Origin: Isurus oxyrinchus
Taxonomy: Eukaryota
DNA: 64,000 nt
NCBI GenBank assembly: GCA_026770705.1
Contig: JANJGN010000036.1
Coordinates: 1,674,001-1,738,000, forward strand
Reading direction: 5' to 3'
Part shown: one piece after another, positions 8,624 to 54,724 of the stretch
Layout of the letters: every line of letters begins with the position of its first letter
Position numbering within the stretch: position 1 is the stretch's first letter
Notes under the pieces: generated by a model
What the model saw: only the letters and a program-made list of their open reading frames with translations
Told to the model about the DNA's origin: nothing
Databases searched by the model: none
Made by a program: the position numbers and the translations under genes

Positions 8624-8782
8624 NNNNNNNNNNNNNNNNNNNNNNNNNNNNNNNNNNNNNNNNNNNNNNNNNNNNNNNNNNNNNNNNNNNNNNNNNNNNN
8701 NNNNNNNNNNNNNNNNNNNNNNNNNNNNNNNNNNNNNNNNNNNNNNNNNNNNNNNNNNNNNNNNNNNNNNNNNNNNNNNNNN
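8624..8782. other. Assembly gap (159 N)
   Basis: Run of N. Confidence 1.
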
Positions 8783-11960: not shown

Positions 11961-12015
11961 ATGCCCAAGACATCTTTATCCCTGATGCTCATTTTCCAAG
12001 TGCTGCGGGTTTCTG
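11961..12015 (+). CDS. A1 leader exon
   Basis: ATG..TCT G|GTGAG, 55 nt; same length and similar sequence in paralogue A2. Confidence 0.9.
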
Positions 12016-15000
12016 GTGAGTTAGAGGCGGGTGAGAATTTTAAATTGGAATCAGCCAGAATTAATATTTACTAAATTGAAATGTGACCCAGTGAACAGGT
12101 TCTGACCAGATCATGGTGTTTATTTTCTGGTTGCTACTGCAAATTAGAGAATAAATCTAACCTAGAATAATTAAAGACAACAATGTCGTTAAATGACAGA
12201 CGAAGTGTCTCAAAGCGACTGCTTCCAGTCTCTAAGTAACCAGTGGTAATGTAACAATAATCGATACAATTACAGAATGTGAGCCGAGTCTGCCTCAGAG
12301 CCCCGTCATAATGACAGCTGAAGTCGGAGAGACGGTGGAATTAGCCTGTCAGCACATTGACGAAGTGGAATTGGTGTCTAGCTATTTCTGGTACAAACAG
12401 CGTGTGGGTGAAGCTCCCAAATTAATCGATATCCAGCCCTGTCAGGGGGCCTATTGTAAGTTTATTTCTAAAAAAAGCGACAGCAAAAATGTGTTGATGT
12501 TGGAAATTCGCAATGTCCAGGAGAATGACTCGGGATCTTATTACTGTGCTGATAAGGTTGTCTATGCATCGCTGCAGAATGGACCCACGCTACTGACTGG
12601 AGGTAAGCGAACAAGTGAAATGAATTCAGATCATGCACAGCATTGTCATTTCGTGAAATTTAATCGTTTACTATGTCCCAATCTCTGTCCAGACATTTCC
12701 ACCGACAACACGGCTCTGCTGGTGTTTGTCCCGCCGGGTGAGCTGCATTTGAGTGAAACCGTCCCGTTAGTGTGTTTGGTCAGTGGAGTTTCTTCCAATC
12801 AGATAGCTATTTTCTGGAATATTTCCGGCCTGGTCAGTGAGGGACAGAGCGATCCCGGAACAAGAGAGGCGGACGGGACCTACAGCATCAGAAGTCACTT
12901 CATGGTGTCGAGGGCAACCTGGAAGAGCGGCGGTTTCTGTACTTGTGTTGTTCAACTGGGTTCTCCTGGTAAATATTGGATAAAGACCGTGTCCTTCTCC
13001 AAACCAGGGGCAGGTGAGTTGTTGATCTGTTCAATGGAGGCTTCACTTCAGATTTTGCGCAGTTCTCAAGATTCTAAGAAACTGCACTCTGTGTATTAAA
13101 CATCTCTACGTGATAAATAGATGAGTGTATAGGAGTGTGTTTCCGTGCGTGTGTTTGAGTGTGTGTGTGAGCGTGTGTGGGTGTCTGTCTGTCTGTAATA
13201 GATATGTATCTGCATTCGGTAAATATGTATAGATGTGTGCGCGTGCGTGTGTCTGTGCATGTGTCTATATATATGAAAACATGTATTATTTTTGTTGAAA
13301 TAAGTTTAAGTTAGCACATTATCTCAGCTTGCCTTATATTTAGTGCGAATTCTTAGAATCACAGATTGACACCGCATGGAATTGAGCCATTCGGCTATTC
13401 TTTTAGTCCCAACCTTTCCCAATAAACCTTTAACAATCTTCCTTCATAATCCCTTAATTATCCAATTTCCCTGTTGAAAGTTATTATCGAATCTCCTTCA
13501 CCCGTCCTTTCTGGCACTGGTTATTGGAATGGAATTGAGATTAGGACGACACAGAATGAGTTTGTGGGAAGAAAACAGTGATTAGGTGAGGTTCTTTGGA
13601 AAATGGATGTGTCCGCAGGGATGTGATTTTGGGTCAATTCCACCACCAACGCCCCCGTCAACCTGAGCGGCTCGTTCTCCATTTCTTGGGACCTCCCTTA
13701 TCAATCTCCAGTTGGTTGGTAAAATTCAGTTTATTTTAATTACACTTTCTAATATCAAAAGTCGGATTAACATTAACATCGGGTTATGAAACTTCATGAA
13801 GTTAAATTATTCGAAACTCTCATCAAGCAGGTAACGCATGAAGGAGGTAGGGCATGTTGAATTGACCACTAAACAACATATGGAAAACTTGGCTTCATTA
13901 ATAGAGGAATCATATGCTAGAAGATTTTATATTTTATTAATGCCTTGTCAGACCGCAGCTGTAGTATTGTGTCCAATTCTGGACACAGTACTATAGGAAG
14001 GCTATCAGGGCCTTGGAGAAGCTGGGGCTGAGATTTGCCAGGATGGGACCAGGGACCAGGAACTTCAGTTAATGTGGAGAGAATGGAGAATCTGGCATTG
14101 TTTCCCTTTCAGCACAGAAGGGTACATGAGGATTATCAACTGAAAGCCAATTGAGTGCAAAACATCAATAGCATGAATGGCTTGTAAAGAGGAATTAAGG
14201 AGGAATCTGTTTCCACTGGCAGGAAGCAAAGCTGGGGTGGTGGTGATTTTGTATTCCTTATACACAAAGAGCCGGCACACACACGAGCCGAACTGCCCCA
14301 GTGCTTGGGCCGCAGCTATTCAGAATCTTTGGATGTGGGGACGAATTGTAATATTTCCAAATTTGTTGAGGACACAACTCCAAGTGGGAATGTAATTTGT
14401 TAAGAGGATCCGACGAGGCTACAAAGGGGTTAAGGCACGCGAAGTGAAATCGCAAGGAAATAGCAGATGGTATATAATGTCAACAAGTGTGAAGTTATCC
14501 ATTGTGGGAGAAAAAAACAAAAAGGCAAGTATTTCTTAAATGGTGGGAAGTTTGGAAATATTCATAACAAAAGCCGCCAGAGTGTCCTTGTTCACGTGTC
14601 ACTGAAAGATACCAAGCAGCTTCAGCAAGCAGCAGTAAGCAACAAGGAAGGTAAGTAATATTTTGTTCTTCATCGCAAGTATATTTGAGTAGAAGAGTAA
14701 AGATGTCTTGGTGCAAATGCATAGAGCCTTGGTGAGATCGCACCTCGAGTATTTTGTACGGTTTTGATCTCCTTATCTAAGGAATCAGGCATTTACCATG
14801 AAGGGAGTGCAGCAGAGGCTCCCCAGGCTAATACCTGGGATGGCGGGATTGTCTGATGAGGGGAGATTGTGGAAACTGGGTCCGCCTTCTCCAGAGTTTG
14901 AAATATTGAGAGGTGATATAAATGAAAGTTGCAATTTGTTTACAGGGTGCAATAGGGACTCTGAAGATAGGATATGTTTTCTCTTGCCTGGTGAGTCTAG

Positions 15001-15857
15001 ATATAGGGAACATGCTGTCAGAATAAGGAGCGAGCCATGCAAAACTGAGATCAGGAGGTATTTCTTCAGTCAGAGGGCGGTGATGTTTTGGAATTCTATG
15101 TCACAGAGTGCTTTGAAAGCTCAGCCACTAAGCGTCATCAAGAAAGTTGTCGATAGATCTCTGGAAGCTCATGACATCAAGAGATGTGTCGATAATGGGA
15201 AAACGGTGTAAGAAATAGATGATCAACCATAATCTCTTTGAATGAAGCACCAGACTCGACGGGCCAAATGGCCTGCTCACGCTCCTATTTCCGCTGTCCC
15301 TACGACCGTAGGCCTCCTCTTGTGCTGTGTCATACTGCGATTCTATAATTAAGTTTCCAGATACACATTGTTATGATGCTTTCATACTGATAACGCTGTA
15401 ATTATGGAGCTATCCTTACAGCGCTGTCATTCCATTCATGTCAATGAGCAAACATTGTGTGATTTATCCCATTCTGTGCATCCACTCATCGCTATCACTC
15501 CTCCTGGCTGTGTCTTTTTTGATTTCTTACCCGAAATTAATGATCCGGCTTTTTAAATGGTCACATTTCCCATGAGGATATACCACAAAATAATGATTTA
15601 ACTGAGCAGCAGTTTCTAAGTCTTGTGTCTCTGCAGGAAGTTGGATTCCGGTACTAAACTTTATCAGAATGGTTGTGGCGCTTCAAGTGCTGCTTTTGAC
15701 CCTCATGCTAATTTCCATGCACAAAAGCGGCAGATCAGGTGAGGATTTCGGGGCCATTTTCAAGATTGTTTCTCAATGTGCTTTGTTTCTCATGGTTTTC
15801 AATCTATAATCACAGTTTCTGGTTACAGAAAGAACGAGACAAGAGATCCTTCAATGA
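11961..15857 (+). CDS. Gene A1: non-rearranging VJ-C1-TM Ig-superfamily receptor, type A (about 277 aa); exons 11961-12015, 12276-12602, 12693-13013, 15637-15738, 15829-15857
   Basis: All introns GT-AG, phase 1, open frame: leader MPKTSLSLMLIFQVLRVS; V ...VELAC...WYKQRVGEAPKLI...DSGSYYC...LQNGPTLLTG; C1 VPLVCLVSG..IFW..DGTYSIRSH..TW..FCTCVV; TM WIPVLNFIRMVVALQVLLLTLMLISM; tail HKSGRSERTRQEILQ*. The last coding exon is ambiguous (alternative acceptor at 15816). Confidence 0.85.
12276..12602 (+). CDS. A1 germline-joined VJ exon
   Basis: TACAG acceptor, GTAAG donor; canonical Cys-Trp-Cys and DSGSYYC; G strand in the same exon. Confidence 0.95.
12693..13013 (+). CDS. A1 C1-set domain exon
   Basis: CCAG acceptor, GTGAG donor; VFVPP, LVCLVSG, W, DGTYS, W, CTC motifs. 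Confidence 0.95.
13750..15300 (+). mobile_element. CR1 LINE fragments in A1 intron 3
   Basis: YNVNKCEVIHCG, VQQRLPRLIPGMAGLS, LRGDINE, IRRYFFSQRAVMFWNSM. Confidence 0.9.
15637..15738 (+). CDS. A1 transmembrane exon with intramembrane Arg
   Basis: CTGCAG acceptor, GTGAG donor, 102 nt; GSWIPVLNFIRMVVALQVLLLTLMLISMHKSGRS. Confidence 0.9.
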
Positions 15858-16027
15858 AAGGTAAGTAGCTGCACCATTTGGAAAGTTTATACCGACTACT
15901 CTATTTAACACTGCGTCAAACCCAATTCAACCCCAGCACTCGTTCCAATGATATATGCTGACATGTTTCAGAACCTGTCCTGCCTTTTAGCTATTTTCTG
16001 AATGACAATGTTCAATATACTTCCCAG

Positions 16028-16135
16028 TCTCAGGTTGGAAATCTCCACGCCTCCCTGGACTTGGCTGCATTGGAAAAAGTAGTCATAAAGGAAGGCTGGT
16101 GGCAGATGAATATCTGGGTGATTTCTGACTCATGA
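16028..16135 (+). pseudogene. A1 terminal exon: vestigial ITIM exon (Tyr to His)
   Basis: CCCAG acceptor; phase-0 frame SQVGNLHASLDLAALEK; paralogous exons read SPYTFL (28488) and LYASL (42440). Confidence 0.65.
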
Positions 16136-19019
16136 ATTACGAAGGAGACAGGATTTGCTGAATGAACCCACAGTCTGGGGAAATGAAAATGGAGACAAGG
16201 ATGCTTCCATCAAACAACCAAAGTATCTCCGTGCACTCCCCAGAGTTACAATGATGGGTTCCTTTTGTTAAAAGTTAAACAAGGAGTTTTGGTTACCATT
16301 GAGAGCAATCTTCCCTATTCATGTAATTCAAGTGTGAAGGAAACATTGACCAAATACGGGGGAATTTCCTGGTTTGTATGCAAGTATTCTGCTGATCATG
16401 CACCTCCAGTTACTGACAGGATTGTTGTTTCTTTGCAAATGTCCCCAAGCAAATACATTAAATTTTGCTTCGATGATAATGATGAAGTGTTTGTGTTGAT
16501 CAATACAAGGAACGTTAGCAGTAAAATATTTTGAGGATCCAGCCCACAGAAACTGCCCAATATTTCGCTTTGGGATTTAAATGAATTCTTAGCTGCATTG
16601 CGCCTGTTAGTGTGAATTTACATTATGATACCGGGTTACATGAAGCGGATCTAATTGCACCAAAACGAATCTAGAGTAAAATATTTCACAGGCAACCTAT
16701 TCATTCCATAGAGTGTAGAAGATTAAGGCCAGCTCGAATCGAGGTGTTTTAGCTGATTCAGTAATTCAATAATGTCGATAGAATGAAAGTATTTCCTCTG
16801 GCCGCGGTTTGGCGGGGTGGGTGGCGGGGAGGGGCTGCAGTAGGGGAGGGGGAGTGGGTTGTTGTGATTGGGAGTCCAGATCAACGGGGCAGAACATTAA
16901 AACCAGAGCCAGTCCGTCCAGTGGCGATGCCAGGAAGCAATTCTTTACAAAAAGAGAAGCGGAAATCTGCATTTGTCTCTCTTCAAGAAGCAATTTAGGG
17001 TGTGGCACAAAGTACTATTTTTATGGTATGGGGCAAAAGAGATATGGAATGAAAACAGACGGGTAAATTTAAGAAACTGATCACGCATGATCTAATTCAA
17101 TTAGATCAATTGGAACAGGCTCGTTAAGCTGATTGGCCGCATGGAAGAGTGACCACACAGAGAGGTATCAGTATCGAGAATGGGTTCCTGGGTAGAGAGA
17201 ATTGGGGTGCGCTTCGTGTGTGTGTTTTTTAAGGGGGACGTTGGTGGAGGTGAGTTGGTGATATTGGGAGGGGATGGGCGGGTTTTGGCTGTGGCTGTGA
17301 AGCTCTCTGAAATGAATTAACAAACCGTCATTGTCCAAATCGTTGAGAAAGACAGACACTTTGCAGATGGATGAAGTGTAGCAGAGTGGCGTTTCCCAAC
17401 TGCATCTTGTAACAACTCTCCTCAATTTCTTTGGATCGCACCTGTGGAGAATGTACTTTCACAGCAGAGTCAGCTGATGTTAATTCGGGAATGTTTATAT
17501 CCGTTAGGAACAGGAAAAACAAGGAATACTCTAAGAGTCCAGTGTTCAACAACCAACTCAACTCTCCAACAATTATTACACCAAACGTTTCCAGTTCAGC
17601 TTCTTAGTATTTCGTAAAGGAAATGTGTCATAGAAATATCTCACATCATCTCATAGAAATGGCATCTCAGTTATACTCCCAAAATTATCTGATAGTCTAA
17701 TGTAAGGAATGAGTTATTTGAACGTATCTAAAATATGAATGCTGCCAGGAAAGCACTCTCAGTCACAGCCAGTGGGTTGTGCTATAATCAGTATAGATTC
17801 TAACATTTATTGAGAAGTGTGCCACAAGATGTCTGTTTCAGAGGGTCAACAGACGTTAGCTGGGATGTGGGACTAAAGTGCACATTCAATGTGTCGGTAC
17901 AGGCGTGAAGGACCGAATGGCCTCCTTCTGTGCTGAAAGTGGTCACTATTCTATGATTCTAGTCGGCAGAATCCACTGAAATGTATAATTGACAGGGAAG
18001 ATGGATTGAACAATAATCTTATTTCAAGAGTAAACTCAATTTTTTTCACTCCCAGGTCACAAACAGTGAAGGCTCGGGAGCAAAGATCAGTGCAGTTTTC
18101 ACAATGATGTGGCCTAAATCCCCAGCCAGTGTCTGAACTGCCCTGTTAGCACTTCTCACCCACACAGATTCGCTCTGTAAATGTCTTTGTAAATTAGCAT
18201 AAAAGACATCCTGAGTATAGTCGTCCTGAAACATCAAAGGCTGTTATCACGAATCTATCATTGGTTCTCAAATCTGTTTTACTATAATGGCAACTCAGAA
18301 CCAGACGCATTGTAAATATTGTTTGAATTATATCTTACTGATTTACTGCATAAATGTGAAAAATGCATTTATAAACACAAAGACGCCGAACGTGGAGAGT
18401 GAAATCAAATTGCCTCGCTTAGCCTAGCAGTCGTACCTGCTGTTTGAAAGAGCTAACCATTATTCCGCACTGCCCCTGCTATTTCCTTCATAATCTGGCA
18501 TATTTTAATCCTTCAAGCATTTATCCAATTCCCTTTTGAAAGTTCCTATTGTATCTGCATCCATTGTCCGTTCAGGCAGCGCCTTCCAGATCACAACAAG
18601 TCGCGTTGTAATAAATAATCTCTTCTCTCCCCCTCTGGTTTTTTCGCCAATTAACTTCAAACTGCGTCCCGCTGATTAGCGACCCTCTTGCCAGTGGATA
18701 GTGTTTTAACTCATTTACTGTATCCAAGACTTTCCCCGCTCTATCTGAAGATGTCAAGAAACGTCACCCTGGAAGGGACCTGACTGAACCAACCTGGCGC
18801 ATTGGCGCCGGCATCAAATCAATGGGGTAAATGGCTGAATTTCTTGGTTAAATTGACACTGGGAATCAGATCCCTTCCTCACTCCCATCCGAGCGGCGCA
18901 AATGATAAAGCGACGAGCGTTCTGTAAATCCATCGTATAATTTTGGACCGCAAACCCCGCCTCAAACACAAGTTAAAAAGTGAATTGTGACCTCTTGCTC
19001 TTTGCAGGCAGGAGCTGAG

Positions 19020-25370: not shown

Positions 25371-27539
25371 AGGATAGTTTAGCATTTGTTCAATTGAAAT
25401 AAATGTTCAGATGGTAATTGTTGACTGGTCTAAAATAAATCTTAAAAGAACGAGGAAAATATTTTTAAACTCTACAATGAAGGACTGGGTGTTAGGGTGA
25501 ACTGGTTTTGACACCGTGTTAAATACAGGGAGACAGCTAATTAGGAAATTTACAAAATGGTTGCATTGCCTCGTGCTTCGTGGGAGCTTTTCCCTCCACT
25601 TCCTGAAACAAAGTGCCGCACTGAGTATTTAAAAGTGATGCACATTAAACAAACACTCATTAAAATGCTCCTGTTAGTCATTAATAAATCCGAATTCCAA
25701 TTAGGAGGAATATGAGAACCCGGATTATCGCGATGCTCATTGCAAAGTGTGAAAGTGCTGCATCCCAATCGAGACAAAACATTTAGAAACTTCAGCTGGC
25801 TGAAATCATTCTTTTTTGGGACTCCCTCATGGGAAGCTTGAGCTAATTATAAAGTTAAAGCAGCAAATCCGTGCTGCAAATTCTCCGCAAGACCCTACAG
25901 GAACCCATGTCAAGGAGTCTTCAGGACAATGCTGAGGGATGGAAAGTAGGAGTGAAGAGGGAAATACATTTTTCTTAATGCGACTAACGTGATAGAATGA
26001 AATAATTTCAGAATGTGTTCTAAAATGAGCAGAAAGTGTTGTTCCTCACTGAGTGCCTGAAGTGTTGTGTAGAAATGCTTGACTTTGAAAAACAAAGAAG
26101 TGAGTCAGTGACCCTTGCAGCAGAGAGCGGGGCCAGGCAGCAAAGAGGCTGTGACAGCGAGCTTCAGAAAGACACCTTCATCACAGCCCATTCCGAGAGT
26201 GTGAAAAGCACATCGAGGGCGGAAATCGCTGGCCCAGATTCTGACCACTTTCCACTTGAGATGGAAAGTTGTCCGAGCCAGAAGGTCTTAGTGGGTTTCC
26301 TGTTATTTTACCTTTTGTTATGCAAGCTTCACGTACCGAAATGCCTGCAGATTTGAAACGCTGGGTATCAATGTTAAACTGCAGAGAGAAGGCGGCTTGC
26401 TCCAAAGATAGATTCAACCGAACAGAGAAGAGATTGGTTTAAAATGGACGTCATTTACAGCGCCCTTATCGATGTGGCATCTGATCAATGTTTATCTTCA
26501 ATCCTGGTTCAGCCTAAAATTTACAGGTTCTCAATATTAGTCACAAATGATGCCCTCACTTCACCTGCGGCTCACAGCGAATACATTGTCTGTTATCCGC
26601 ACACAGGCAACACTGCAACAGCTCACTCACTCGTTTAATGTCGTTTTCAACACAATACAGACACAATTCATTCAATATGTTCCAGTCTCGCTATTGAGCA
26701 GATTGTATCATGAATTGTGCATATCAATGTGCAATTCACGTGAGGTTATTGAAACTTATATTACTTTACTGAGATTTTATTTTTGGGGTAATTTTCATGG
26801 CGTCCCATTACTGAATGCTTCAGGTAGTTAACAGAGAGCTTGGGTCAGTCTGCAGCATATATTTTTATGTGAAATCCCAATCGTCCTCTAAATTGCATCG
26901 GAACATAGTCCTCATCCTTCTCCCATTCTGAAAATATAAATGATAAGCTAATGTCCACGATAGCATTTACCTGTCAGCCTTTTCGGCGGATTCCAGCTTT
27001 TTCTCTTCCAACGTTCTCCTTTCATTTAGTTTATCTCTACAATGAGGCCATTCCGCCCTCTCCTGCCTCCCCCTTCTTCTCTCCCCCACCTAACTGCTTT
27101 GCTTTCATATATTAGACAACGAATTGCAGATAAGACCAATCTCAACCCAATATCATTTTGCAGTTATGGCAAAATATTTTCATGTTGTGAGTGACAAAGA
27201 TGGGATCAATTTGGGCAGACGGTGCTGTTGTGTATGTATATGTGTGGTGTGTCTGTGCATGCATGTGTTTGTGTGTCTCTGTGTGTGTATGTTTCCGTGT
27301 CTGTGGGTGTCTTTGTGTGTGAGTGTATGTATGTGTGTGTGTGTGTGTGTTTGTGCATTTGTGTCTGTGCATGTGTGCGTTTCTTTGTCTGTGTGTGTGT
27401 TTGTGTGTCTATGGGTGGGTGTGTTTGTGTGTGTGTCTGTTTGTGTGTTTGCATATGTGCGTGTGTGAACGTGATTGCCCGTACCTCAGTGGGCCGCTGT
27501 CTATCTCTATCCCCACCCACCTCCCTCACCCACCTACAC

Positions 27540-27970: not shown

Positions 27971-28487
27971 TTGTGTGTGCGTTAATCTATCTGGATACAA
28001 TTAATTCTGTGGGATCTCCCCTACCACATAGATGGCATAGAGCATGGTAATCTGATTGGCGAGTTAACATCAATGCAACCCAATCAAATTGAGATTAATA
28101 ACCCCCATTTTCAAATTACACCTTGGTGATTTCTGTATTAAGTTGCATTCCGAATTCTGCTTCTCTATTCCAATACGTTAATTCAGGTAGTTCTTGCAAT
28201 GAACATTTAGCAAAACAATTATAAAACTAAGATAGGAAACAATGAAAGCAGAGATAATAATACATTTCAAAAGGCATGCGTATTTTGTGGTAGGAAAATG
28301 CAAAGATATGGGGAAGGAGATGCGTTCACTTGGACGTACTGGGTTACATTTTCGAAAAGCTGGCACAGACACCATGAGCCGAATGGCTTCCTTCTGTGCT
28401 GTATCATTCTATGATTCGATCAAGCACTATTGCAGAGATAACCTGACCTCACCTTTAACTACTTTTGAATGTGAATACATATCCCAG

Positions 28488-28547
28488 TCTCAGGGCAGAT
28501 CTCCCTACACCTTCCTGGAGTTTGCTGCATTGGAAAATAAATCATAA
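28488..28547 (+). pseudogene. Orphan ITIM-bearing terminal exon (A-related, third type)
   Basis: CCCAG|SQGRSPYTFLEFAALENKS*; SxYxxL is a canonical ITIM; 3' flank homologous to 16135-16530. Confidence 0.7.
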
Positions 28548-31500
28548 AGAAGACGGGTTGCAGGTAAGAATCGGAACACTTTCTCTCTGATGAATTATGG
28601 AGGAGGTAGGATTTGCCAAATAACCCACAACCTCGTGGAAACAAAATGGAGCCATGGAGACCCCCATAAATCAACTAACCTACTCCCACCAGAATTTACA
28701 AAAAAAAAATCTCCTTTTCTAAAATGTGAAGTAAAATGTTTTCAGAATTATTGAGGATATTCCACTATATTCGTGTAATCCAAATGTGAAGGAAACACTG
28801 AACAAATCTTAGGGATGTTCTTCAGTTTCTCTGGACTTTTTCTGTTGATCCTGAAATTCCAATTACTGACAGGATCTTTATTTCTTTGCAAACGTCTGTA
28901 TATAAGTAATTAAAATAAATTATTCTTCCATCATAATGATTCATCAGAGATTTGCATCGATCAATGATTAGCAAATAATTCAATGTCAAATGAATGAAAC
29001 TGCAATTCCTGTTGAGCTGACAATATCAGCACTGGATTGAGATGGTTTGGTGGTGGTGTTTTCTGCCTGAGACGTGACGTCTTTAATCATTTACAAAATT
29101 AGAACACAACAGGAGAAGGACACGGGCCCTCATGTAGGAACCTTGTGATGGTCGCATTTTACTTTTACACAGTGTGTTCTGCTTTGGGCTTAGTTTTAAA
29201 TACATATGTCAGAGCCTTTGGTTCAGTGCAGTGTATTTTGAAAGAAGAGGTGACTTTGCAGCTATGTTTCCCCAAGCCGATCACCACTGGGGTATTCACT
29301 GCTCATGCCTGGAATGCTGTAGACAAATTACTAGGGATATATTGCCATAGAAACCCAATTATCATCGTACCACTGAACTGCCAGACTGGTAGGTGCAATC
29401 TGGATCGATGTTTTTTTTTTCCTTTTCCTGTTTTTATTTCCCTATTTTCCTGATTCCAATTCTGCAAAATTTGGCAACAATGTTGTCAACGAGAGAGATA
29501 AGGTATTACCCCAGAGCCGGGCACACATCATTGTTGATCTGGGTCATATCAGTCTAAATATTCGCATTCTGCTAACTCTGGAATCAAAAGGTAAAGCCGA
29601 TTGAGAGAAACAAGCAACTAAAAACAGCTCCTGGTAAAGTCACTTTCAAGATCCATCTCCCAGAAACTGTCCAATAAACCTGTTGAGGATTTAACTGAGC
29701 TCCTGACTGTAGTGACCTTGTTAATGTGAATTTAGTTTGTATTGTAGTGTTATTGACAACAGATATATTTTAACAGGACTCGGGTTAAGAAGGTTAAACT
29801 ACAAGAGCAGGTTGCTCAGACTAGGCTTGCATTCCCTCCGTGATGATGTTTCTGGTTCACACGAGACTCCTCCCAATCTTCTGCATCCCACCCCATTAAC
29901 ATATCATTCCATTCATTTTTCCCTCATGTGATTATTCAACTTCAACTGAAAAGCACGTTTGATAGTCAACTCAACTTCTCCCCCTGGGAGCGAGCTCGAC
30001 ATTATACCCAATCCTTGGGTAAAGAATATTATCATGAATTGCCGATTGGATTTATTAGTGAATATCTTAAACTGATGGCCTAGCCTTCTTGTTACCACCT
30101 CAAGTGTAGAATCATTTCATAATTTTGAAGACCTCTATCCGGTCACCTTCTCAGTCTACTCTTATCCAGAGAAAAGAGTGCCAGCCTGTTCAATATTATC
30201 TGAAATCATAAAATCTCATTTCTGTTATCATTCCAGTAGAAATGTTCCCAAATCTTAAACCGCACACATCTGCTCTATAAAGATATCGTCAATTGCAAAT
30301 TCAATGAACACATTTGGACTGAGCGACCAAACAACTTCAAATGACAAACGCAATTCTTGGATTTCAAAACCTGCTTTAATGAGTTGGTAAATTGGAGACT
30401 GATGCTCTCTTTCCTGCTCAAGCTGAAACAAAGATCCGCAATTAAATTAAAAAAAAACGCTGACACAACAAAGTAACACATGTAGAAACTGAACAGAAAG
30501 CTAAAATGTCCGAGTGTCAACGTTCTCTTGAAATGCAGCCGGTTCTATGAGGCATGCAGTCTCTCCAGAAGTCGATAAATTGCCTCTTTATTACTGATAA
30601 ATCTGCGTTTAGAATTTGGGATGTCAATTTGTTAGGAAGGTTCACATGTCCAGGCTGTCCGCCAATGAGGACGAAAAAAGAGGTAACTTTCAACAGCACG
30701 TCATATCCTGGAAGCAGCATATGAGCTGTCAATTTCCATTATTATCAAAGTGTTGGGTCCGCATTAAACGCCAGTCGAGCATAAAGAGTCTGCAAGAGAA
30801 AGCACAAACCGTGATCATGAGAAACAGCATCATTAGGGGGCAGAAAGAGGACATTCAGCCCTTCGAGCCTTCACCGCTAGACATTTAAATCATTTTGGAT
30901 CCGCATCTCAACCCTGTTTACCCTCCTTGCTACCATAACCCTTAATCCAACGAAAATATATCACACTGCGTTTTAGCATTTTCTGCTGACCCCCCATCTA
31001 TTTTTTTTACATTTATTGTCAAAGTGCTATTGAAAAGGTAATCAGTGCTATCTTAAAACATGCGCCTTGTAAAGTCTCATACCCTCATATGATAGTAACC
31101 AGATATCTTCAAACTTGAATTCAAAATCCACCATCTCTATTTACACACGCTGAGAACCATTTCTATTCATAGTTACCGCCTTTTCTTCTGTACTTGCTCT
31201 CGAATATGTCAGTTACTTATCAATGTTCATATTGCCTGTTAGAAGGAGCATTTTAAAATAAGTAGAACTGTGCACATTTCACACTGAGCCGGCTGAAAGT
31301 GTATACAGCCCTTCGCCAAGTAGATAGTTTAAGAGCGCTCCTGAGTTACATCTCCTTCCAATCTCCCTCCTGTTTGCCGGGTGTTGCAGATCCTTCCCCT
31401 GGCGAGCAGGACTAACGCCAGAAGGAGTAGCGCCGCCAACAAATTCCTGAAATGCGAGAAACAGCAGGGGGCAGGTAGCGGTGAATCTGGAGAGCAAATA

Positions 31501-42250: not shown

Positions 42251-42381
42251 AATTGTTTGATGGGGATCTCCATGGCTCAATGGTTACTTGTGCAAGGCTG
42301 TGGGTTCTTTCGCAAATCGTCTCTCCTGCATAATTCATCGGAGGGAAAACATCCGGATTCTCATCTGCGACCCGCCTTCTT

Positions 42382-43760
42382 TTATGATCTCTTTTCCGAT
42401 GCAGTCTTGTCCAAAGAAGCGTAGAGAGTCCGCCCTGAGACTTGGAGACACATTCAACATTGATGTTCAAAAATACTTTAAGAAGACACGTCAAATTATC
42501 TTGGGCCGCAATTGCGTTTCATAGAATCATAGATTGATACATCCCAGGAGGAGACCATTCGACCCATTCTGTCCATCCGGGGTTTTTGTAAACGCCATCC
42601 AATTAGTCCCACTATCCCCTTCTCAGACCCCTTACCCCAACTATTTTCTCCCCTTCAAGCCTTCATTCTTCAATCTGTTATTGATTCTGCTTTCATTGCC
42701 ATCTGTACCGATTTGACATTTTTATGTTCAATGTTTCAATGCAAGAATTGCCTGAATGAAGGTTTTGTAACAGATAAGTAAAATTCGGAAATCAATTAAC
42801 ACAAAAATTACCAAAGTTTAATCAGGAAACTGGAATGGTGACTCTATCGATTTGAATGGATTGCTCTGCTGTTCACTGGTCAGTTCGGTTATCATGTTTC
42901 GCCATGCGTCTTGTACATGATAGAATCGTACACACAGTCAAAATAATTTCGTTTATATTGCTCCTTTCACGTATTCAGGCAGGCACTGGTCACTCAAAGG
43001 CACTTCACGGAAACGTAATTACTGTTCGTTGTGTATGATACGCAGCAGCAATTTTGCACACATTAAGATCCCATAGAAATGATGATCTTAATGGTCCAAA
43101 TGATTTATTTTTTGAGATGTTGGTTGAGGGGTTAAATATCAAACATGACACAGGTAATAACTCCGCCCTGCTCCTTCTCCAACAGCGCTGGCGACATCTT
43201 TTATCCAACTGGAGAGCACAGCCAGACCTCGGCTTAAAGCTTCACCTGAAAACTGCATCTCGAAATTGCAATACTCTCTCAGTCCTGCACTTGAATGTCA
43301 GTCCAGACTTATTGCTCAAGTCCCTGGAGTGAGGCCTCGAACCCACGGCCTCCTGACTAAGAGATGTGTATGGGGAGGTGGGGTGGGTGGGGGGAGAGAG
43401 TTACAGGAAAAACCATTGAGGCAAGGTGCACAATCGCTCACGCAATCCCACAGTCAAACGCACACACAGACTCGCACACTCATATTCTCCAGAACTCATT
43501 CCTTCTTTGCCCACTTACAACAGGAACATATTTTGATTTACCTATAAAACTACCGTGAGTTAGACCTTACCTTCATTGTAATTCCAGTGGCTAGTATATT
43601 TAGAAACAAAATTGTTGGGTGGAGGACGGAGGCATGAGGGCCGAGGAAGATGGGATCTAGACTCACCGTAGAAATAAACAAAGTAAAATAAAAATCACAT
43701 AAAGCTAGAGATCGAAAGTAAAAACAGCAGGGAATCAGAAGTAAAGAATTAAAAGACATT
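42382..43760 (-). pseudogene. Relic 3' half of a third receptor type: decayed TM-like exon 43760-43667, 20-nt exon 43590-43571, LYASL terminal exon 42440-42382
   Basis: AG|..|GTGAGT flanks a hydrophobic ECLLILYF*..YVIFILLCLFL segment; AG|CCACTGGAATTACAATGAAG|GTAAGG is phase 1 to 0; terminal exon homologous to 16028, 28488 and 50876 with a 1-nt deletion. Confidence 0.55.
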
Positions 43761-48230: not shown

Positions 48231-50771
48231 GTTCCTGGAGAGTGGAGATTGAAAAGCATCTTCTGAGAGACGGAGAACAATGAAACTGGTTGTCTCACAG
48301 TGTGACAAGTGTCATATCGGGCAGTGTCTTGGGACCGTAGCGATGGGGTTTGAAAAGAGGCCCATGGCATCTGTTTGGTGTGTGGTGCACGTGGTGGGTC
48401 GAGTTGATTGGATATTCCTATAGTCTCAATTTACCATGCAAATCTAGCTGGGGAGTTACAGGAAGGAAGCTCTGTTCAGGCTGTACCTAAACCTAAGCCC
48501 CTCACGTGTAAAAAAGGGCAGCTGCCTTTGAGGGAGAAACACCACCAAACATTCAGTTTGCTGCCACCGGAGAAGATGGTTGAAGGACTGAATGACCCAA
48601 TTCACATCCAAGCTTGAGAATTTTAAAAGTGATGCATTAATCTGCCCAGATGCCATTTGACAGGAAATAGTTAATGATTCCTTCAGAGACCCAGTTAAAC
48701 TCTTTTCGAATTTACAACGAAGCGCTTTATTGGTGGATTTATGGCTTCAGGCGATATTTTAAAAAAGTATTCCCAGGATGTGTGCTTCGCTGGCTGGGCC
48801 AGCATTTATTGCCAATCCCTAACTGCCCTTGAGAAGGTGGTGTGAGCTGTCTTCTTGAACCGCTGCAGTCTATGTGGTGTAGGTACACACACAGTGCTGT
48901 CAGGGAGGTTGTTCCAGGATTTCGACCCAGAGACAGTGAAGGAACGTCGATACATTCCCAAGTCACGATGATGAGTGTTTTCGGGAACTTCCAGGTGATG
49001 TTGTTCCCAAATAGCTGCTACCGTTGTCCTTCTAGGTGGTAGCCGTCATTGGTTTGAAAGATGCTGTCTTAGCAGCCTTGGTGAATTCCTGCACCGCATC
49101 TTGTAGAAGGTAAACAAAGTGCTACTGTGCTTTGCTGTTGGAGGGAGTGGTTTTTTTTGATGGGTTGCCAATCAAGCGGACTGCTTTGCCCTCGACGTGT
49201 CCAGCTTCTTCAGTAGAAGCCGCACACATCCAGGCAAGTGAGGAGTACTTGAAGCAGGAAAAATGTATATGTCTAGATGTTTTGTAACTTGCAGATCGTG
49301 GTGCCCCGTTCTGCCCTTCTTCTTTGAGGTGGCAGAGTTTGCTTGTTTGGAATGTGCTGCCGAAGGGTCCTTGAGGAGTAGGTGCTGTTCACCTCGTGTT
49401 TACTTCAGGCTGCAGCCACTGTGCGTCGGTGGTGGGGCGGGTGAATATTTGAGGTTATGGACGAGGTGTTGCTCAAGCAGACTGGATCAGTGACAGCGTG
49501 GTTATCAAACCTACATCTTCGAGAAAGATTGAAATGAGCAACATAGTCAAAACTGACCACGAGAAATCACACGCAAATTCCCTGTCTGACAGGTGATTAA
49601 ATAAATAGAGCTTATTTTACATTCCCTGTCAATGTTTAAATTATCCCTTTGCTCCTGCAGAGACCTGTTTAAAATATCTGAATCGCTTGACAACCATCCT
49701 CCCCGCAACTGGATACCTTATAAACTGGGAAAATAGGCAATTTAATCTCCCGCATAGGCTAAGTTAACTCACCTCAGTGCAGGCCAGAGAATCCACCCAG
49801 CTTTTAATGGCCTTTAAGTACCTAAGTGTGCCACGTACTATTTTGAAAGAGATTGAACAGTACTGCAATACATCACCAAGTGGTGCCGCCACGTTATACA
49901 CCTCATCATGTCGTATGAATAACTTATATATGTTTTTGGATAACTGAAATATTACACAGTCTGCAGCGGTTTGCTGTCCTATGGGCCGATATTTGGTACT
50001 TATCCCAGTGTGCATCCCTGGCAAATGCAAGCAGAGCACAGAGATCTATGTCACAGTTGAAGCCCGATATCTTTCTCCAGAAGGACTGCTGCATCTCTTT
50101 CTACATTTGCTTGACAAAGACACATTGCACCAATTAATCTGCCCTCTTCTCCATTTAATCACAGACTGATCATTTATCTACATTTCCTCCCTTCCCTGCT
50201 CTTTGTTTGAAACTTGTAAAGTGAGTAAACGTTTCGAGCTCTGGTCTGAAGCATTACGTCAGTGATGCTCATAGAAAGACGAAGGGTTATCCAGATCTTC
50301 AGAAGACAAAGACTTGTCTTGTAAATGTCAACTCTATTTGTAAATGTGGTGAGCAACATACAATATTGGAAGAACGTAACGTGGTTTGCATCATATGTAA
50401 TGTCAGAAATTAAGGGTCACGTATGAACGTTTATAAATTTTCAGGAATAATGTGTACTTTAGTAGAAAGAACGACTTTTCTCAAATTCCCTCACTCCCTT
50501 ACAAAGCCTCATGCCTCCCGCTCGAATAAGTTTTCAAAATCATTTGAAGTTTTGCAGATGAATTTTCAAGGTTTTATTTATCGATTCTGGTTTCAGTGAA
50601 ATATTGCTCACTTCCATATCTCCCCCTTGCAACTTACACCAGGTATAGTCCAGTTGAAATGAGTTGCGAGGGGAAAGTTGACTGTTTGGCCGTCAACTGG
50701 CTGCTGAAGTTTGGAAATTGCACCGCAAATGCAGTGGATTATTTGGCAAATTCTGTCTCCTCCACAATTCA

Positions 50772-53700
50772 TCAGAGTAAATCCATCCCGGGTTCCCATC
50801 TGCGATCCGCCTTCTTTTTCGATCTATTTTCCAATGCAGCAAACTCCAGCGAGGTAAAGGGAGGTCCTCCCCAAGACTGGGAAATATATTAAACATTACT
50901 ATTAAAAGCAAGTAAAAGACAGGTCAGGTAATCTCTCTAACATTTATCAAAGTATTTCCTGATTTTTCTCTGTTAAACAATGCTCAGCTCTATCTCCACG
51001 CTGAACTTGTGGCTGCTTTGATGTTCCTGCCATTTAACATTGATTCTCTCCTCTCCCTTGGTGAATCCCTGATAGTTTCCAGTCCGCCCCCTGAGGGAGG
51101 GTTTGTATCACTTTAATCAAATGATAGAGACAAACGTTTACGGAGATGAGGATTCGCCCTTTTAAATTCATTCATTCACACAGAGACAAAATAACACCAA
51201 TTGCAACCAGCCCTGCTGCTTCTGACATGACGTTAGGCTTTTCACCCCCAATACCAAAACAGTTCCAGAACTGATATTTAATTTTTGTCCTTGGAATTAT
51301 TTTTCTCTTTAGATATTTACCTCAATGCCATTTAAAAGTTAATATTGACAGCGGAAGCTGAGCCAAGAACTCACACATCGACGCGCGTACACACATAAGG
51401 CGAAACTCATAGGCACAGAAATACACACGCACGCACCCGGAACGACACACGCGCGCACATAAATATCTATATTGTACACACACACACACAAACACACACA
51501 CACAAGCACAAAACAAACTGGATTCGAACAAAAATGCAATGCAAGTGTTAGGTCTTGTAAATCCTGGCTAATGTGCCAGAAAAAAAAGTGCAGAAAATTG
51601 TCGAGCGGTCTTGGAATCAGACTTGAAAGATCATGGAACATGTCAGCGTCTATCATTGGAATCAGTGTTGGAATTGAACTGGGTTAGACACAGTGTTAAA
51701 TATGGACAGGGCGTTCGGGATAAAGTGTTCAAATGGCTCAGTTAGTCACTTTTCATTGGGGGATCTCTTGTCTCGTTCTTATGAAAGGAGAATCTGTAAT
51801 TCGCAGTTTAAAACTGCGAGAACAGAATCACATTGGACAACCAATTATGAAAATGTCCCTGATAAACATTGATCCTGACCTGATCTGCCGCTTTTATGTG
51901 TCCAAATGAAAATGAACATCAAGAGTAGAACTGGGATCGCCGCCACTATTCTGATAACATTAAGAGTCGGAATGCAGCATCCTACAGAGAAAACACAATT
52001 AGAAAAAGCTGCTCGGTCCAATCATTATTTTCCGAGATTCCCTCATGGGAAACGTGATGCAGTTAAAAGTTGGTGCCTCAAACAGCAAGTGCGACAGATC
52101 GCGGCGAATGGACGCACGGAATGAAATATATGAAGCAATGTTTTCCAGTTGAGATCAATTGGAGGACAGCACTGTCAGGATTAGTCCAAGCTTATAATGT
52201 ATCAGGATGAAAAGATCTTACCAATGTCTACCTGGAAACTGAGCTGGAGAATGATAGACTGAACCAACAAGGAAGGAGGCAGTTCGGCCCATCATGTCTG
52301 TGCCAGCTGTTTGTGTTAAATAAATCAACACATTTTTTTACGTTTGGTTCTCTCTCAGTGAAAAGAGTTTCTCCTTATTCACTCTATCAAAACCATTCAT
52401 GATTTTGAGCATCTGTGCAAAAAGTTCCCGTTAACCTTCTCTCCTGTAAGGAGAACAAGCCCAGATTCTCCATTCTCTCCACATTAACGGCCGCATTCTG
52501 GTAAATGTTCAAAGTACCTTCTCCTAGGGCACAACACTCCAGCTTGCCTCTGACCAGGCTTTATAAATTGCAAGTTTCCCTTCTATTTGATTCCTCCATT
52601 ATTTAAGCCGAGGTCTCCCAATGTCTTTTAGCGACAATCACAACTTGTCCTGCCACCTTGAGATATTAGTATACATGCGCTACCTCCCAATGAGAGTTCA
52701 AACCGATCAGCTCTAAATAACCCAACTTCAATGTCGGTTGATAACCCGAGGTTAGTGTTAAATCCGGCTTACTGATATCACCAACTGATATTAAAATTAA
52801 ACTGCATTTTTTCAGGTAAATTCAGATTGATAAAGTACATTCCGGGAAAAGAAGACGGAGAAAGGAGGAATTGAGTGGTAGCTACGACCCTGCACATTCA
52901 TCGCTTTTCCCCAGCTATCTCATCTCTTCACTGCTTTCTGCTCATAAACGCATTCAGTGTGGAACTAATCTCAACCCTGTTCCTCATCCACTGCCTGAAA
53001 TTACGGGGAATCCGAATGAATTATACCTTTCATCAGGGATTTCGGATTATTTAAGGAGATTTTATGAAGGGGAAAGTGTTACAGATTATTGGGAAAGAGT
53101 GCAATTAATTGAATATCCCCTTTCTGTGCTGTATCACACTGTAATTTTAAGATGTCGCATAGTAACATAAGGCGAGTCAAGAAAGTCTCCCACTCGGACA
53201 GAGGGAAACATTAAATTATGCCAAGAGATTGAATGCACTTTTTAACTTACATTATAGACAGACACAGACGCAATCATACATATGTATATAAGATATATGT
53301 ATATACACAAACATACACACATAGAGACACATATACACACATATTCATACGCACACATATTTCCAAACAGGCATACACACCCGTACATTATCTATATATC
53401 CATGGTATTCTGTGGATTTCCTGGACATGATTAATTCGGGCTATTAGAAATTACCGAATTAGTCCCACTGATACTTTGAATAAAAGCCACCATTGAATAT
53501 ATCACCAGCTCACCTATCCCTGCCTGTGCTGATTTGGACAACGTGCTCTTGGTCCAATATTTTTTTTCTGGAGACCCCCAGTGGAACAATATAAGTGCAC
53601 ACAGCGTCTCTATTCCAGGTTTCCCTCGACACCATGACGTGGCTTCTGATAATGTAGGTCCCGTCTGCCTCACTTGTACCGGGATCGCTCGGTCTCTCGG

Positions 53701-54724
53701 TGACCAGGCCGGAAATATTCTACAAAATAGCAATCTGGTTGGTGAAACACCACTACCAAATACACTAAGGGGGCGGTTTCCCTCAAAGGCAGCTCACCCG
53801 GCGGGGCAAACACCACCAAAACCGTCTTGTTTGTGGGACTGTCTGGACAGAGTTTGCGGGACAGTTAACGCTTAATTTGCACGATATGTTAATATTGTGT
53901 ACGAGCTGAATTCATTTCAATTACTCTCTCACCTCCAACCAGTGGAGTCGATCCATTCTGGAGAAGTGCATAGCCATCCTTCTCAGCAAATACAAACTTC
54001 AAATTTGTCGAGGTCGCAGGTTTAGAAGGTGAACGCCTGGATTTCGGAAAGTAGCATCATTGTACTCCACCTCATTTATTCTGTGAAAGTGGTTGTACAA
54101 GACTTGTGATAAAATCTGGCCCACTCATTCAGCTGGAGATTGCGAATTTGTTGAAAGGATTCATATTCGCTGTCACCTGTTTTTGGAAATAAAAATACTA
54201 TGGGTCCACTGAGAAGGAGAGATATCGACAAGATTCGTGTCTTCACACACACGCTGTTTGTACCAGAAATAGCTCGACACAAATTCCACTTCATAAATGT
54301 AGTGGCAGATTAATTCCACCGTGTCTGCGACTTCAGCTGTCATTATGAAGGGACCCTGAAACAGAGAGGGCTCGGATTCTGCAACTAGAGAGATTATTGC
54401 TACATTACCGCAAGTTACTGAGAGATAGGACGCAGCCGGTTTGAAACACGTCGCATTAATTCAAGAACAGTCACATCATTATTTTCAATTACTTTTGGCT
54501 AGATTAATTCTGGAATTTGCGGGGTTTTTTTCACTTTATGGGAGGAATCATTAAATGAACTCACATGATTGGAGCAAATCCCTTCACCTGAACACTGGGT
54601 CAGAATTTCAGCTTTGTTTCCACTGTTTCTGCTGATTCAGTTTAAAATTTTCACCCGCCTCTTACTTACCAGAAATTCGCAGCAGTTGGAAAATGAGCAT
54701 CAGAGGTAAAGATTCCTTGGACAT
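50772..54724 (-). pseudogene. A2 pseudogene; exons 54724-54670, 54378-53933, 53842-53514, 51981-51880, 51793-51750, 50876-50772
   Basis: Leader MSKESLPLMLIFQLLRIS; V MTAEVADTVELIC..SSYFWYKQRV with a frameshift and an insertion replacing DSGSYYC; 90-bp V-C intron as in A1; C1 Cys>Tyr plus frameshifts; TM GCCIPTLNVIRIVAAIPVLLLMFIFIW; terminal exon PPFTSL. Confidence 0.9.

What the first reader, a model, noticed from the sequence alone, without database searches (positions are those of the whole stretch)
15637..16135. Type A looks converted from inhibitory to activating: TM Arg, early stop, dead ITIM
Seen: the TM carries Arg in both A1 (LNFIRMVVAL) and A2 (LNVIRIVAAI); the small cytoplasmic exon has RTRQEI(L/P)Q-TGA in both when read in the phase that joins the last exon; the last-exon Tyr is His in A1 and Phe in A2 but Tyr in orphan copies (SPYTFL, LYASL). 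Known: an N-terminal TM Arg mediates FcR-gamma/CD3-zeta association (NKp46, NKp30, LILRA; also TCR-alpha). Inference: an activating receptor derived from an ITIM-bearing ancestor. Caveat: A1 has an alternative acceptor at 15816 giving a different, still ITIM-less tail.
Basis: partly seen in the sequence, partly recalled or inferred. Interest (0 to 1): 0.8.

Follow-up and report, generated by a model that had tools for sequence, protein, structure and literature searches.

The report
Shark activating-type VJ-C1 receptor gene
A shark gene for an antibody-like surface receptor has the membrane-anchor arginine motif (NxxR) and tyrosine-less tail typical of "accelerator" immune receptors, while its relatives carry a "brake" motif; this is the familiar paired-receptor design, found here in an unstudied shark gene family.

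Summary
A1 (11961-16135, +) has intact leader, VJ, C1 and TM exons. Its TM exon has Asn 15657-59 and Arg 15666-68, an NxxR motif. In tetrapod LRC, FCRL and SLAM receptors this motif marks FcR-gamma coupling (PMC2413239, PMC6557307).

No splice choice gives A1 an ITIM:
- The exons that carry the reading frame into the ITIM exon are missing.
- The best acceptor runs into TGA at 15855-57.
- The ITIM tyrosine codon is His.

- A2 is a pseudogene, with an insertion in V and frameshifts plus a stop in C1.
- The TGA shared by A1 and A2 is only the +1-frame reading of the conserved ..N-E-K codons, so it is not independent evidence.
- The change is not local. NxxR TM with a tyrosine-less tail recurs in this family in catshark, horn shark and two carpet sharks. 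Plain-TM paralogues with near-identical ectodomains end in (I/V/P)LYASL.

A1 is therefore the activating half of an old paired-receptor family. Adaptor binding, expression and the real 3' splice remain untested, because no RNA run was available.

The scan had already noted NxxRM on a VJ-C1 chain about 377 kb away (s1-870886).

Verdict: new member of a known kind, moderate interest.

The parts
11961..12015 (+). A1 leader exon (ATG at 11961, ends in phase 1)
   Evidence: Canonical GT donor. Matches the leaders of family members.
12276..12602 (+). A1 V exon with the J-like strand fused in the germline (..YYCADKVVYASLQNGPTLLTG)
   Evidence: Pfam V-set E=4e-10. Closest solved chains are Ig light-chain V domains. 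V and J lie in one exon, so there is no room for an RSS.
12693..13013 (+). A1 C1-set constant-domain exon
   Evidence: Pfam C1-set E=1e-9. Closest solved chains are Ig heavy-chain CH3 domains. A1 keeps 78 of 86 columns that are at least 90% conserved in the family.
15637..15738 (+). A1 transmembrane exon with the NxxR motif (Asn 15657-59, Arg 15666-68). The juxtamembrane Cys found in all other TM-bearing members listed is absent (SW instead of WC).
   Evidence: AG acceptor and GTGAGG donor; 102 nt, phase 1 to phase 1.
15829..15860 (+). A1 small cytoplasmic exon. The CAG acceptor (exon start 15829) leads to TGA at 15855-57. The AAG acceptor (exon start 15833) gives the family's canonical frame, ERDKRSFNE. 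A further acceptor gives an exon start at 15816.
   Evidence: The canonical frame was inferred from the tails of homologues.
16028..16135 (+). A1 relic of the ITIM exon (..NLHASLDLAALEK.., His codon at 16046-48). It probably serves as the terminal exon and 3' UTR (ATTAAA at 16457).
   Evidence: tblastn to the tails of ITIM-type homologues. Homology to the orphan copies runs to about 16400. Poly(A) signal found.
50734..54724 (-). A2, a pseudogene copy of the NxxR type. TM exon 51981-51880; small exon 51777-51750; last exon with Phe codon at 50858-56.
   Evidence: About 100 bp inserted in the V exon (about 54094-53990). Two 1-nt deletions and TGG>TAG (53722-20) in the C1 exon.
28485..28568 (+). 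Orphan last-exon copy that keeps the tyrosine (SPYTFL, TAC at 28506-08) and is followed closely by a stop
42367..42447 (-). Orphan last-exon copy that keeps the tyrosine (TLYASL, TAC at 42423-21), with an in-frame stop after ..EKRS

Best explanation
A1 is an intact copy of the activating-type sub-lineage of an elasmobranch family of non-rearranging VJ-C1-TM receptors, which RefSeq labels "immunoglobulin kappa light chain-like".

Shown here:
- The ectodomain exons are intact.
- The TM helix has Asn and Arg three residues apart in its outer third (NxxR).
- No possible splice gives a tyrosine motif.
- In four other shark species the same NxxR TM goes with a short, tyrosine-less tail, while plain-TM paralogues with near-identical ectodomains end in an ITIM-like (I/V/P)LYASL motif.

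Inferred mechanism:
- The buried Arg pairs with the membrane Asp of an ITAM adaptor dimer, most likely FcR-gamma or possibly CD3-zeta.
- Ligand binding by the VJ domain would then activate the cell.
- The ITIM-type twins would counter that signal through phosphatases.

Inferred history:
- The NxxR exon arose from the family's own plain TM exon. It has the same length and register, with Pro>Asn and Ile/Val>Arg.
- This happened before the galeomorph shark orders split.
- The ectodomains are kept alike by sequence exchange between paralogues.
- The tail, no longer needed, was disabled separately in each lineage.
- In A1 this left the ITIM exon as an untranslated or out-of-frame terminal exon.
For: - Gene model and motif.
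- V-set and C1-set domains.
- A1 keeps 78 of 86 highly conserved family columns, whereas its neighbour A2, about 25% diverged, carries an insertion, two frameshifts and a stop. This argues for purifying selection on the A1 ectodomain.
- NxxR TMs in register: S. canicula P0021, P0062, P0063 and P0061; Heterodontus P0016; Hemiscyllium P0029; Chiloscyllium P0031. All have short, tyrosine-less tails.
- Catshark isoforms X3 and X4 splice the small exon straight to the last exon in the non-ITIM frame. Isoform X5 and P0061 end at ..SQNE. These parallel the A1 readings.
- None of 6 NxxR genes has the Y motif, against 25 of 34 plain-TM genes (Fisher p=0.0013).
- The ectodomain tree groups sequences by species, not by TM type. 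For example Hemiscyllium P0028 (ITIM) and P0029 (NxxR) are nearest neighbours, and NxxR needs 6 changes on the tree.
- The NxxR TM is the FcR-gamma-associating type in LILRA2, PIR-A, NKp46, GPVI, OSCAR and Fc-alphaR. It was shown to bind FcR-gamma in Xenopus XFL receptors (PMC2413239; PMC6557307).
Against: - No transcript evidence. The only runs holding this stretch are DNA contigs of a 95-99% similar genome, so expression and the acceptor actually used are unknown.
- A1 alone lacks the juxtamembrane Cys present in all other TM-bearing members listed. This could mean decay or a change in how the chains pair.
- The Fisher test ignores phylogeny. Only 3 well-supported independent pairs exist, and the sign test is not significant.
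- Akula et al. 2014 (PMC4016189) found no FcR-gamma in the shark data then available. The only counter-evidence is an earlier scan note (s1-863553) that I did not re-test.
- The shark NxxR TM lacks other marks of the tetrapod NxxR exon, namely the DYT start and the acidic C-terminal end (PMC6557307). The resemblance may therefore be convergent, and the adaptor could differ.
Confidence: 0.62

Rival explanations
1. A1 is itself a decaying or silent gene. On this view the extra A in the small exon, the missing middle exons, the His for Tyr, the scrambled end of the last exon and the lost juxtamembrane Cys are early pseudogene lesions, not an adaptive truncation.
For: - The cluster is full of dead copies: A2, a B-type relic at 34.4-33.7 kb, a TM relic at 25.7 kb and two orphan last exons.
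- No protein identical to A1 appeared in the protein searches.
- No RNA was available.
- The loss of the Cys is unique to A1.
Against: - All lesions lie downstream of the TM exon, which is where activating receptors are expected to decay.
- The leader, V, C1 and TM exons have no stop, frameshift or splice defect, although A1 is about 25% diverged from A2, which has at least four such defects in its V and C1 exons.
- RefSeq models of NxxR genes in catshark have tails truncated in the same way.
Confidence: 0.2
2. The TM Arg does recruit a partner, but not FcR-gamma. It could dock a DAP12-like or CD3-like module, or stabilise a heterodimer with the neighbouring B-type chain, as the TCR-alpha Arg and Lys do in the TCR-CD3 complex.
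For: - The chain is built like a TCR or Ig chain (VJ + C1).
- The identity of the adaptor cannot be read from the sequence.
- The shark TM lacks the other marks of the tetrapod NxxR exon.
Against: - In the LRC, DAP12-coupled activating KIRs carry a TM Lys rather than an Arg in an NxxR motif (PMC6557307).
- The TM of DAP12-associating KIR2DS is unrelated to NxxR TMs (PMC2413239).
- From general knowledge, DAP12 partners usually carry a mid-membrane Lys and TCR-alpha has Arg plus Lys, whereas A1 has a single Arg in the outer third.
- The B-type TM in this window has no acidic residue to pair with the Arg.
- A1 lacks the Cys that would link it covalently to a partner chain.
Confidence: 0.13
3. 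The NxxR TM arose independently and recently in each shark order, including in this cluster, by parallel mutation of the local plain TM exon.
For: - The NxxR TMs share order-specific residues with plain TMs of the same order. Examples: Gln in the middle of A1 and of Carcharodon P0004; CKL at the start in both Heterodontus types; CN in both carpet-shark types.
- The ectodomain tree needs 6 changes of TM type.
- Pristiophorus P0033 has its Arg one position further along, which looks like a separate event.
Against: - The same two positions (Pro>Asn, which needs two base changes, and Ile/Val>Arg) would have to change in the same register in the four orders.
- A1 and A2 already shared NxxR before diverging by about 25%.
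- Partial sequence exchange between paralogues, with selection keeping Asn and Arg, explains the same pattern with a single origin.
Confidence: 0.2

Closest known systems
NxxR-TM activating receptors coupled to FcR-gamma (LILRA2, PIR-A, NKp46, GPVI, OSCAR, Fc-alphaR; Xenopus XFL, ILR and SLAM-like receptors)
   Same: Asn-x-x-Arg in the outer part of the TM helix. Short tail without tyrosine motifs. ITIM-bearing paralogues with near-identical ectodomains sit in the same gene cluster (PMC2413239, PMC6557307).
   Different: The ectodomain is VJ + C1-set and looks like an antigen receptor, not C2/I-set. The TM exon aligns in register with the family's own plain TM exon and lacks the DYT start and the acidic C-terminal end of the tetrapod exon, so it may be convergent. 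The papers I read trace this TM type only as far as amphibians and birds.
SIRP-beta / SIRP-alpha pair
   Same: Non-rearranging V domain with a J-like strand, followed by C1-set domain(s). One member has ITIMs and the other has a charged TM and a short tail. This comparison rests on general knowledge.
   Different: SIRPs have three domains (V-C1-C1). SIRP-beta uses a TM Lys and DAP12. No specific sequence relationship was shown here.
Activating KIRs derived from inhibitory KIRs
   Same: The same evolutionary route: a point change puts a basic residue in an otherwise similar TM, and the ITIM tail is cut off (Abi-Rached and Parham 2005, as cited in PMC6557307).
   Different: KIRs use Lys and DAP12 and have C2-type domains. 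The shark change is much older and coexists with ongoing homogenisation of the ectodomains.
PRARP (Fu et al. 2019, chicken non-rearranging VJ genes with an ITIM)
   Same: Non-rearranging VJ domain, ITIM-type tail, and gene pairs. Earlier scan agents suggested that the shark family is its elasmobranch branch.
   Different: Membership was not tested here because the paper is not held and no PRARP sequence was available. The profile search reached only weak hits in bony vertebrates (P0059, P0060).
TCR-alpha chain
   Same: VJ-C1-TM chain with a basic residue in the TM that recruits ITAM-bearing modules.
   Different: A1 has no RSS and no rearrangement, and it has one Arg in an NxxR motif rather than Arg plus Lys. 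A1 also has no connecting-peptide Cys.

Membership tests
NxxR-TM, adaptor-coupled activating IgSF receptors | Asn-x-x-Arg in the N-terminal (outer) part of the TM helix | tested here: met
   A1 reads LNFIRM (Asn 15657-59, Arg 15666-68). A2 reads LNVIRI. The motif is defined in PMC2413239 and PMC6557307.
NxxR-TM, adaptor-coupled activating IgSF receptors | Short cytoplasmic tail without ITIM, ITSM or ITAM | tested here: met
   All three acceptor choices, and intron read-through, give tails without a (S/I/V/L)xYxx(I/V/L) motif. The tyrosine codon is CAC. Which tail is actually made is not known.
NxxR-TM, adaptor-coupled activating IgSF receptors | ITIM-bearing paralogues with closely similar ectodomains (paired receptors) | tested here: met
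   Plain-TM members end in (I/V/P)LYASL. The ectodomain tree groups sequences by species, not by TM type. No intact ITIM-type A gene lies inside this window, only two orphan ITIM exons.
NxxR-TM, adaptor-coupled activating IgSF receptors | Physical and functional association with FcR-gamma (or another ITAM adaptor) through the Arg | not testable with these tools
   This needs co-expression and co-precipitation. The presence of an FcR-gamma gene in this genome rests on an earlier scan note (s1-863553) that was not re-tested. PMC4016189 reported none in sharks in 2014.
NxxR-TM, adaptor-coupled activating IgSF receptors | Other conserved marks of the tetrapod NxxR exon (DYT at the start, acidic residue at the C-terminal end of the TM) | tested here: not met
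   The A1 TM exon starts SWIPV and ends LISMHKSGRS. These features are listed in PMC6557307. This argues against descent from the same exon, not against the same way of working.
Elasmobranch non-rearranging VJ-C1-TM family (type A) | V-set domain with a germline-fused J-like strand, one C1-set domain and a single TM exon | tested here: met
   Pfam V-set and C1-set. V and J lie in one exon, 12276-12602. 41 homologues found with E as low as 1e-100, all from sharks and rays. 78% identity to Cetorhinus P0002.
ITIM-bearing inhibitory receptor | (S/I/V/L)xYxx(I/V/L) in a translated cytoplasmic tail | tested here: not met
   A1 has NLHASL, and the frame is closed by TGA or by a frame slip.
PRARP | Orthology to the chicken PRARPA and PRARPB genes | not tested
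   The paper is not held and no PRARP sequence was available from any tool.
Rearranging antigen-receptor chain (TCR / IgL) | Separate V and J segments flanked by RSS | tested here: not met
   V and the J-like strand are contiguous in one exon.

The most novel reading that the evidence does not exclude
The NxxR-type A chain works as part of a germline-encoded, TCR-like A/B receptor that plugs into an ITAM adaptor (FcR-gamma or CD3-zeta) through one membrane Arg. That would make it a living example of how an antigen-receptor-shaped VJ-C1 chain was wired to ITAM signalling without RAG. It would also put NxxR/FcR-gamma coupling back in the common ancestor of jawed vertebrates, rather than in bony fish as published.
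Probability: 0.12. Interest if true: 0.8.

Novelty: new member of a known kind. Interest (0 to 1): 0.48.

Why it matters
- Paired activating and inhibitory receptors are a recurring solution in vertebrate immunity, but almost nothing is described for sharks.
- One published survey concluded that FcR-gamma and LRC-type receptors first appear in bony fish.
- An NxxR membrane anchor on an antigen-receptor-like VJ-C1 chain, kept in four shark orders beside ITIM twins, suggests that adaptor-coupled activation already existed in cartilaginous fish.
- It also offers a simple, testable pair (A1-type and ITIM-type) for asking what these germline "antibody-like" receptors recognise.

Tried and rejected
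- **RNA evidence.** Laying four of them showed intron coverage and no splice joints. The short joint 15747>15830 has sides of only 18-20 nt, and a contig end nearby (loose end at 15746) reads like the A2 intron, so I set the joint aside as paralogue noise.
- **The look-up of encoding contigs.** The canonical small-exon frame and the "extra A" in A1 are therefore inferred from protein models only.
- **Word search on the TM and tail of P0021.** It found only P0021 itself.
- **Papers.** The PRARP paper is not held. Paper searches for a description of this shark family, or of shark FcR-gamma, found nothing usable.
- **Phylogenetically independent contrasts.** Only 3 supported pairs exist, too few for significance.
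- **dN/dS between A1 and A2.** Values were 0.66-0.79 for V and C1 and 0.27 for TM. They are blurred by A2 being dead, so I use them only as a measure of divergence.
The look-up by sequence was blank, which means nothing.
- **The big representative search, structure prediction and the Atlas.** I did not use them, because family scans and the word search had already placed the protein.

Full report
**What is there.**
- The exons are: leader 11961-12015, V exon 12276-12602, C1 exon 12693-13013 and TM exon 15637-15738. All have AG/GT splice sites and are in phase 1.
- The V exon is a Pfam V-set domain (E=4e-10). Its J-like strand (..LQNGPTLLTG) is fused in the germline.
- The C1 exon is a C1-set domain (E=1e-9).
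- Among solved structures, the V domain is closest to antibody light-chain V domains and the C domain to heavy-chain CH3.
- The TM exon reads SWIPVLNFIRMVVALQVLLLTLMLISMHKSGRS, with Asn at 15657-59 and Arg at 15666-68.

**How sequences were handled.** I searched the model exon by exon, or as the uninterrupted ORF 12236-13096, which reads through the V-C1 intron. The joined exons were translated only once, in a local script, to check the frame.

**The second copy is dead.** A2 (54724-50734, - strand) is colinear with A1 at 71-79% nucleotide identity in exons and introns alike.
- Its V exon carries an insertion of about 100 bp (about 54094-53990).
- Its C1 exon has two 1-nt deletions and a TGG>TAG change at 53722-20.
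- Its TM exon (51981-50880 is not the span; the exon is 51981-51880) still reads ..LNVIRIVAAI...
- NxxR therefore predates the A1/A2 split, but A2 is not a second working example.

**The tail.** In long-tailed family members the small exon encodes E(E)RDKRS.NEK and ends in phase 2. Middle exons rich in Arg, Glu and Gln then bring the frame to phase 0, where the last exon reads ..GGPLYASLDLAALEKRSKKK...

A1 has no room for middle exons, because only 167 nt separate its small exon from its last exon. None were found in A2 either. Joining the small exon directly to the last exon in the canonical frame therefore reads the last exon out of frame. The only frame that would enter the ITIM reading is the +1 frame of the small exon. 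In that frame the conserved codons AAT GAA A.. are read as ..A ATG A.., which gives TGA. This is why both copies share "RTRQEI(L/P)Q-TGA": it follows from the coding constraint in the other frame and is not an independent shared mutation.

A1 has two AGs 4 nt apart (CAG-AAAG).
- Catshark isoforms X3 and X4 differ by one Glu, which points to a 3-nt tandem acceptor in that species. From protein models alone, I infer that A1 carries one extra A.
- The CAG acceptor (exon start 15829) gives RTRQEILQ and then TGA at 15855-57. This stop is 3 nt from the exon end, so the transcript should escape nonsense-mediated decay.
- The AAG acceptor (exon start 15833) gives ERDKRSFNE, followed by the out-of-frame last exon (..PPWTWLHWKK, stop).
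- The acceptor at 15816 gives a third tail, also without an ITIM.

In the ITIM frame itself the tyrosine codon is CAC in A1 (16046-48) and TTT in A2. It is TAC in the orphan last exons at 28485-28568 (+) and 42447-42367 (-), and both orphans also have stops. The dead ITIM is therefore robust. The early stop is the most likely of several equivalent outcomes.

**Relatives.** The ORF search found 41 proteins, all from sharks and rays. RefSeq labels them "immunoglobulin kappa light chain-like" or similar. A profile search raised the number to 58. Their C-terminal parts fall into two classes.

Plain-TM class:
- The TM reads GWC..LP.xIT...
- The long tail ends in (I/V/P)LYASL(D/E)xAA.
- In rays this is an exact ITIM (ILYASL), as it is in Heptranchias (VLYASL).

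NxxR class:
- Asn and Arg sit in exactly the A1 register.
- Members are two Scyliorhinus canicula genes (P0021, P0062, P0063 and P0061), Heterodontus P0016, Hemiscyllium P0029 and Chiloscyllium P0031.
- All have short, tyrosine-less tails, each ended in a different way. Catshark ends at ..SQNE or reads out of frame (..GPWSLLH). The carpet sharks stop in the first middle exon. The horn shark stops a little later.

No NxxR form was found among the ray proteins. Pristiophorus P0033 has an Arg one position further along.

**Association and tree.**
- None of 6 NxxR genes has the Y motif, against 25 of 34 plain-TM genes (Fisher p=0.0013).
- That test ignores relatedness. Only three well-supported independent pairs exist, so the sign test is not significant.
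- On the ectodomain tree the two classes do not separate. Sequences group by species or order: Hemiscyllium P0028 with P0029, Heterodontus P0016 with P0012 and P0015, catshark P0021 with P0023-P0026. NxxR needs six changes on the tree.
- This is the classical picture of paired receptors whose ectodomains are homogenised while the signalling ends stay different.

**How it most likely works.** The NxxR TM is the conserved type found in LILRA2, PIR-A, NKp46, GPVI, OSCAR and Fc-alphaR, all of which associate with FcR-gamma. In Xenopus XFL receptors it was shown experimentally to mediate FcR-gamma association (PMC2413239; PMC6557307).
- I infer that the A1 Arg, with Asn one turn above it, docks an ITAM adaptor dimer. 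FcR-gamma is the first candidate and CD3-zeta the second.
- The plain-TM twins would signal through the LYASL tyrosine.
- The motif, the tail and the cross-species pattern are shown. Adaptor binding, expression and splicing are inferred.
- A 2014 survey found no FcR-gamma in shark data (PMC4016189). An earlier scan follow-up reports an FcR-gamma gene in this very genome (s1-863553). I did not re-test either claim.

**History.**
- The NxxR exon has the same length and register as the plain TM exon. It also shares order-specific residues with it: a mid-helix Gln in A1 and in Carcharodon P0004, and CKL in both Heterodontus types.
- It lacks the DYT start and acidic end of the tetrapod exon.
- I read this as an origin in place by Pro>Asn and Ile/Val>Arg before the galeomorph orders split. 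Later partial homogenisation and lineage-specific decay of the tail would explain the rest.
- Repeated parallel origin remains possible (about 0.2).

**Is A1 alive?**
- All its lesions lie behind the TM exon.
- The four 5' exons are clean.
- A1 keeps 78 of 86 strongly conserved family columns, while A2 collected at least four disabling lesions in its V and C1 exons.
- Against this, A1 alone has lost the juxtamembrane Cys (SW in place of WC), no identical protein is on record, and no RNA run was available.
- I put a functional activating-type gene at about 0.6 and decay at about 0.2.

**Limits.**
- The single run search and the single read-laying run gave only DNA.
- The PRARP paper is not held, so membership in that family is untested.

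**Verdict.** The scan had already noted NxxRM on a VJ-C1 chain about 377 kb away (s1-870886) and had described the family in several windows. This is a new member of a known kind, of moderate interest.

Noticed in passing
window 25680-25770 (-): A third, decayed TM-exon relic (..FAMSIAIIRVLIFLLIGIRIY, then stops). It lies just downstream of a 65-bp match to the intron in front of the A1 TM exon (25835-25771). The acceptor is lost.
   Followed up: partly
window 15637-15650 and 12276-12285: A1 has lost the juxtamembrane Cys that all other TM-bearing family members listed keep (GSW instead of GWC). It has gained a Cys at the very start of the mature V domain (..ECEPS..). This may change how it pairs with another chain.
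   Followed up: partly
proteins P0005, P0008, P0017, P0040, P0050, P0052 (other species): RefSeq isoforms skip the 102-nt, in-frame TM exon. These are predicted to be secreted forms that still carry the whole cytoplasmic tail. The same kind of clone was seen among Xenopus XFL cDNAs (PMC2413239).
   Followed up: no
proteins P0002, P0004, P0010 (Cetorhinus, Carcharodon): None of the lamniform plain-TM models shows the LYASL motif. P0010 reads the last exon in the alternative frame (..RPWTWLHWIKDQKRRR..). Either the models are wrong, or lamniform sharks have lost the ITIM in several plain-TM genes too.
   Followed up: no
proteins P0048 and P0051 (Hypanus sabinus), P0038 (Rhinoraja): Some ray members have a TM Arg that is not in an NxxR motif. 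P0048 seems to combine it with the ILYA.. tail, and P0051 has both Arg and Glu in its TM.
   Followed up: no
window 19787-23205 (+), 58183-58957 (+), 34420-33678 (-): B-type VJ-C1 genes or relics are interleaved with the A genes. B1 lies in tandem downstream of A1. B2 lies head to head with the dead A2. The copy at 34 kb has stops. The B1 TM has a Cys but no charged residue.
   Followed up: partly
window 15286-15673 and 16644-17400: The four DNA runs of the 95-99% similar genome leave these stretches uncovered, including the start of the A1 TM exon. Nearby contig ends read like the A2 intron. The cluster may differ in structure between individuals or species.
   Followed up: no
window 8624-8782: An assembly gap (159 N) lies 3.2 kb upstream of the A1 start.
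   Followed up: no
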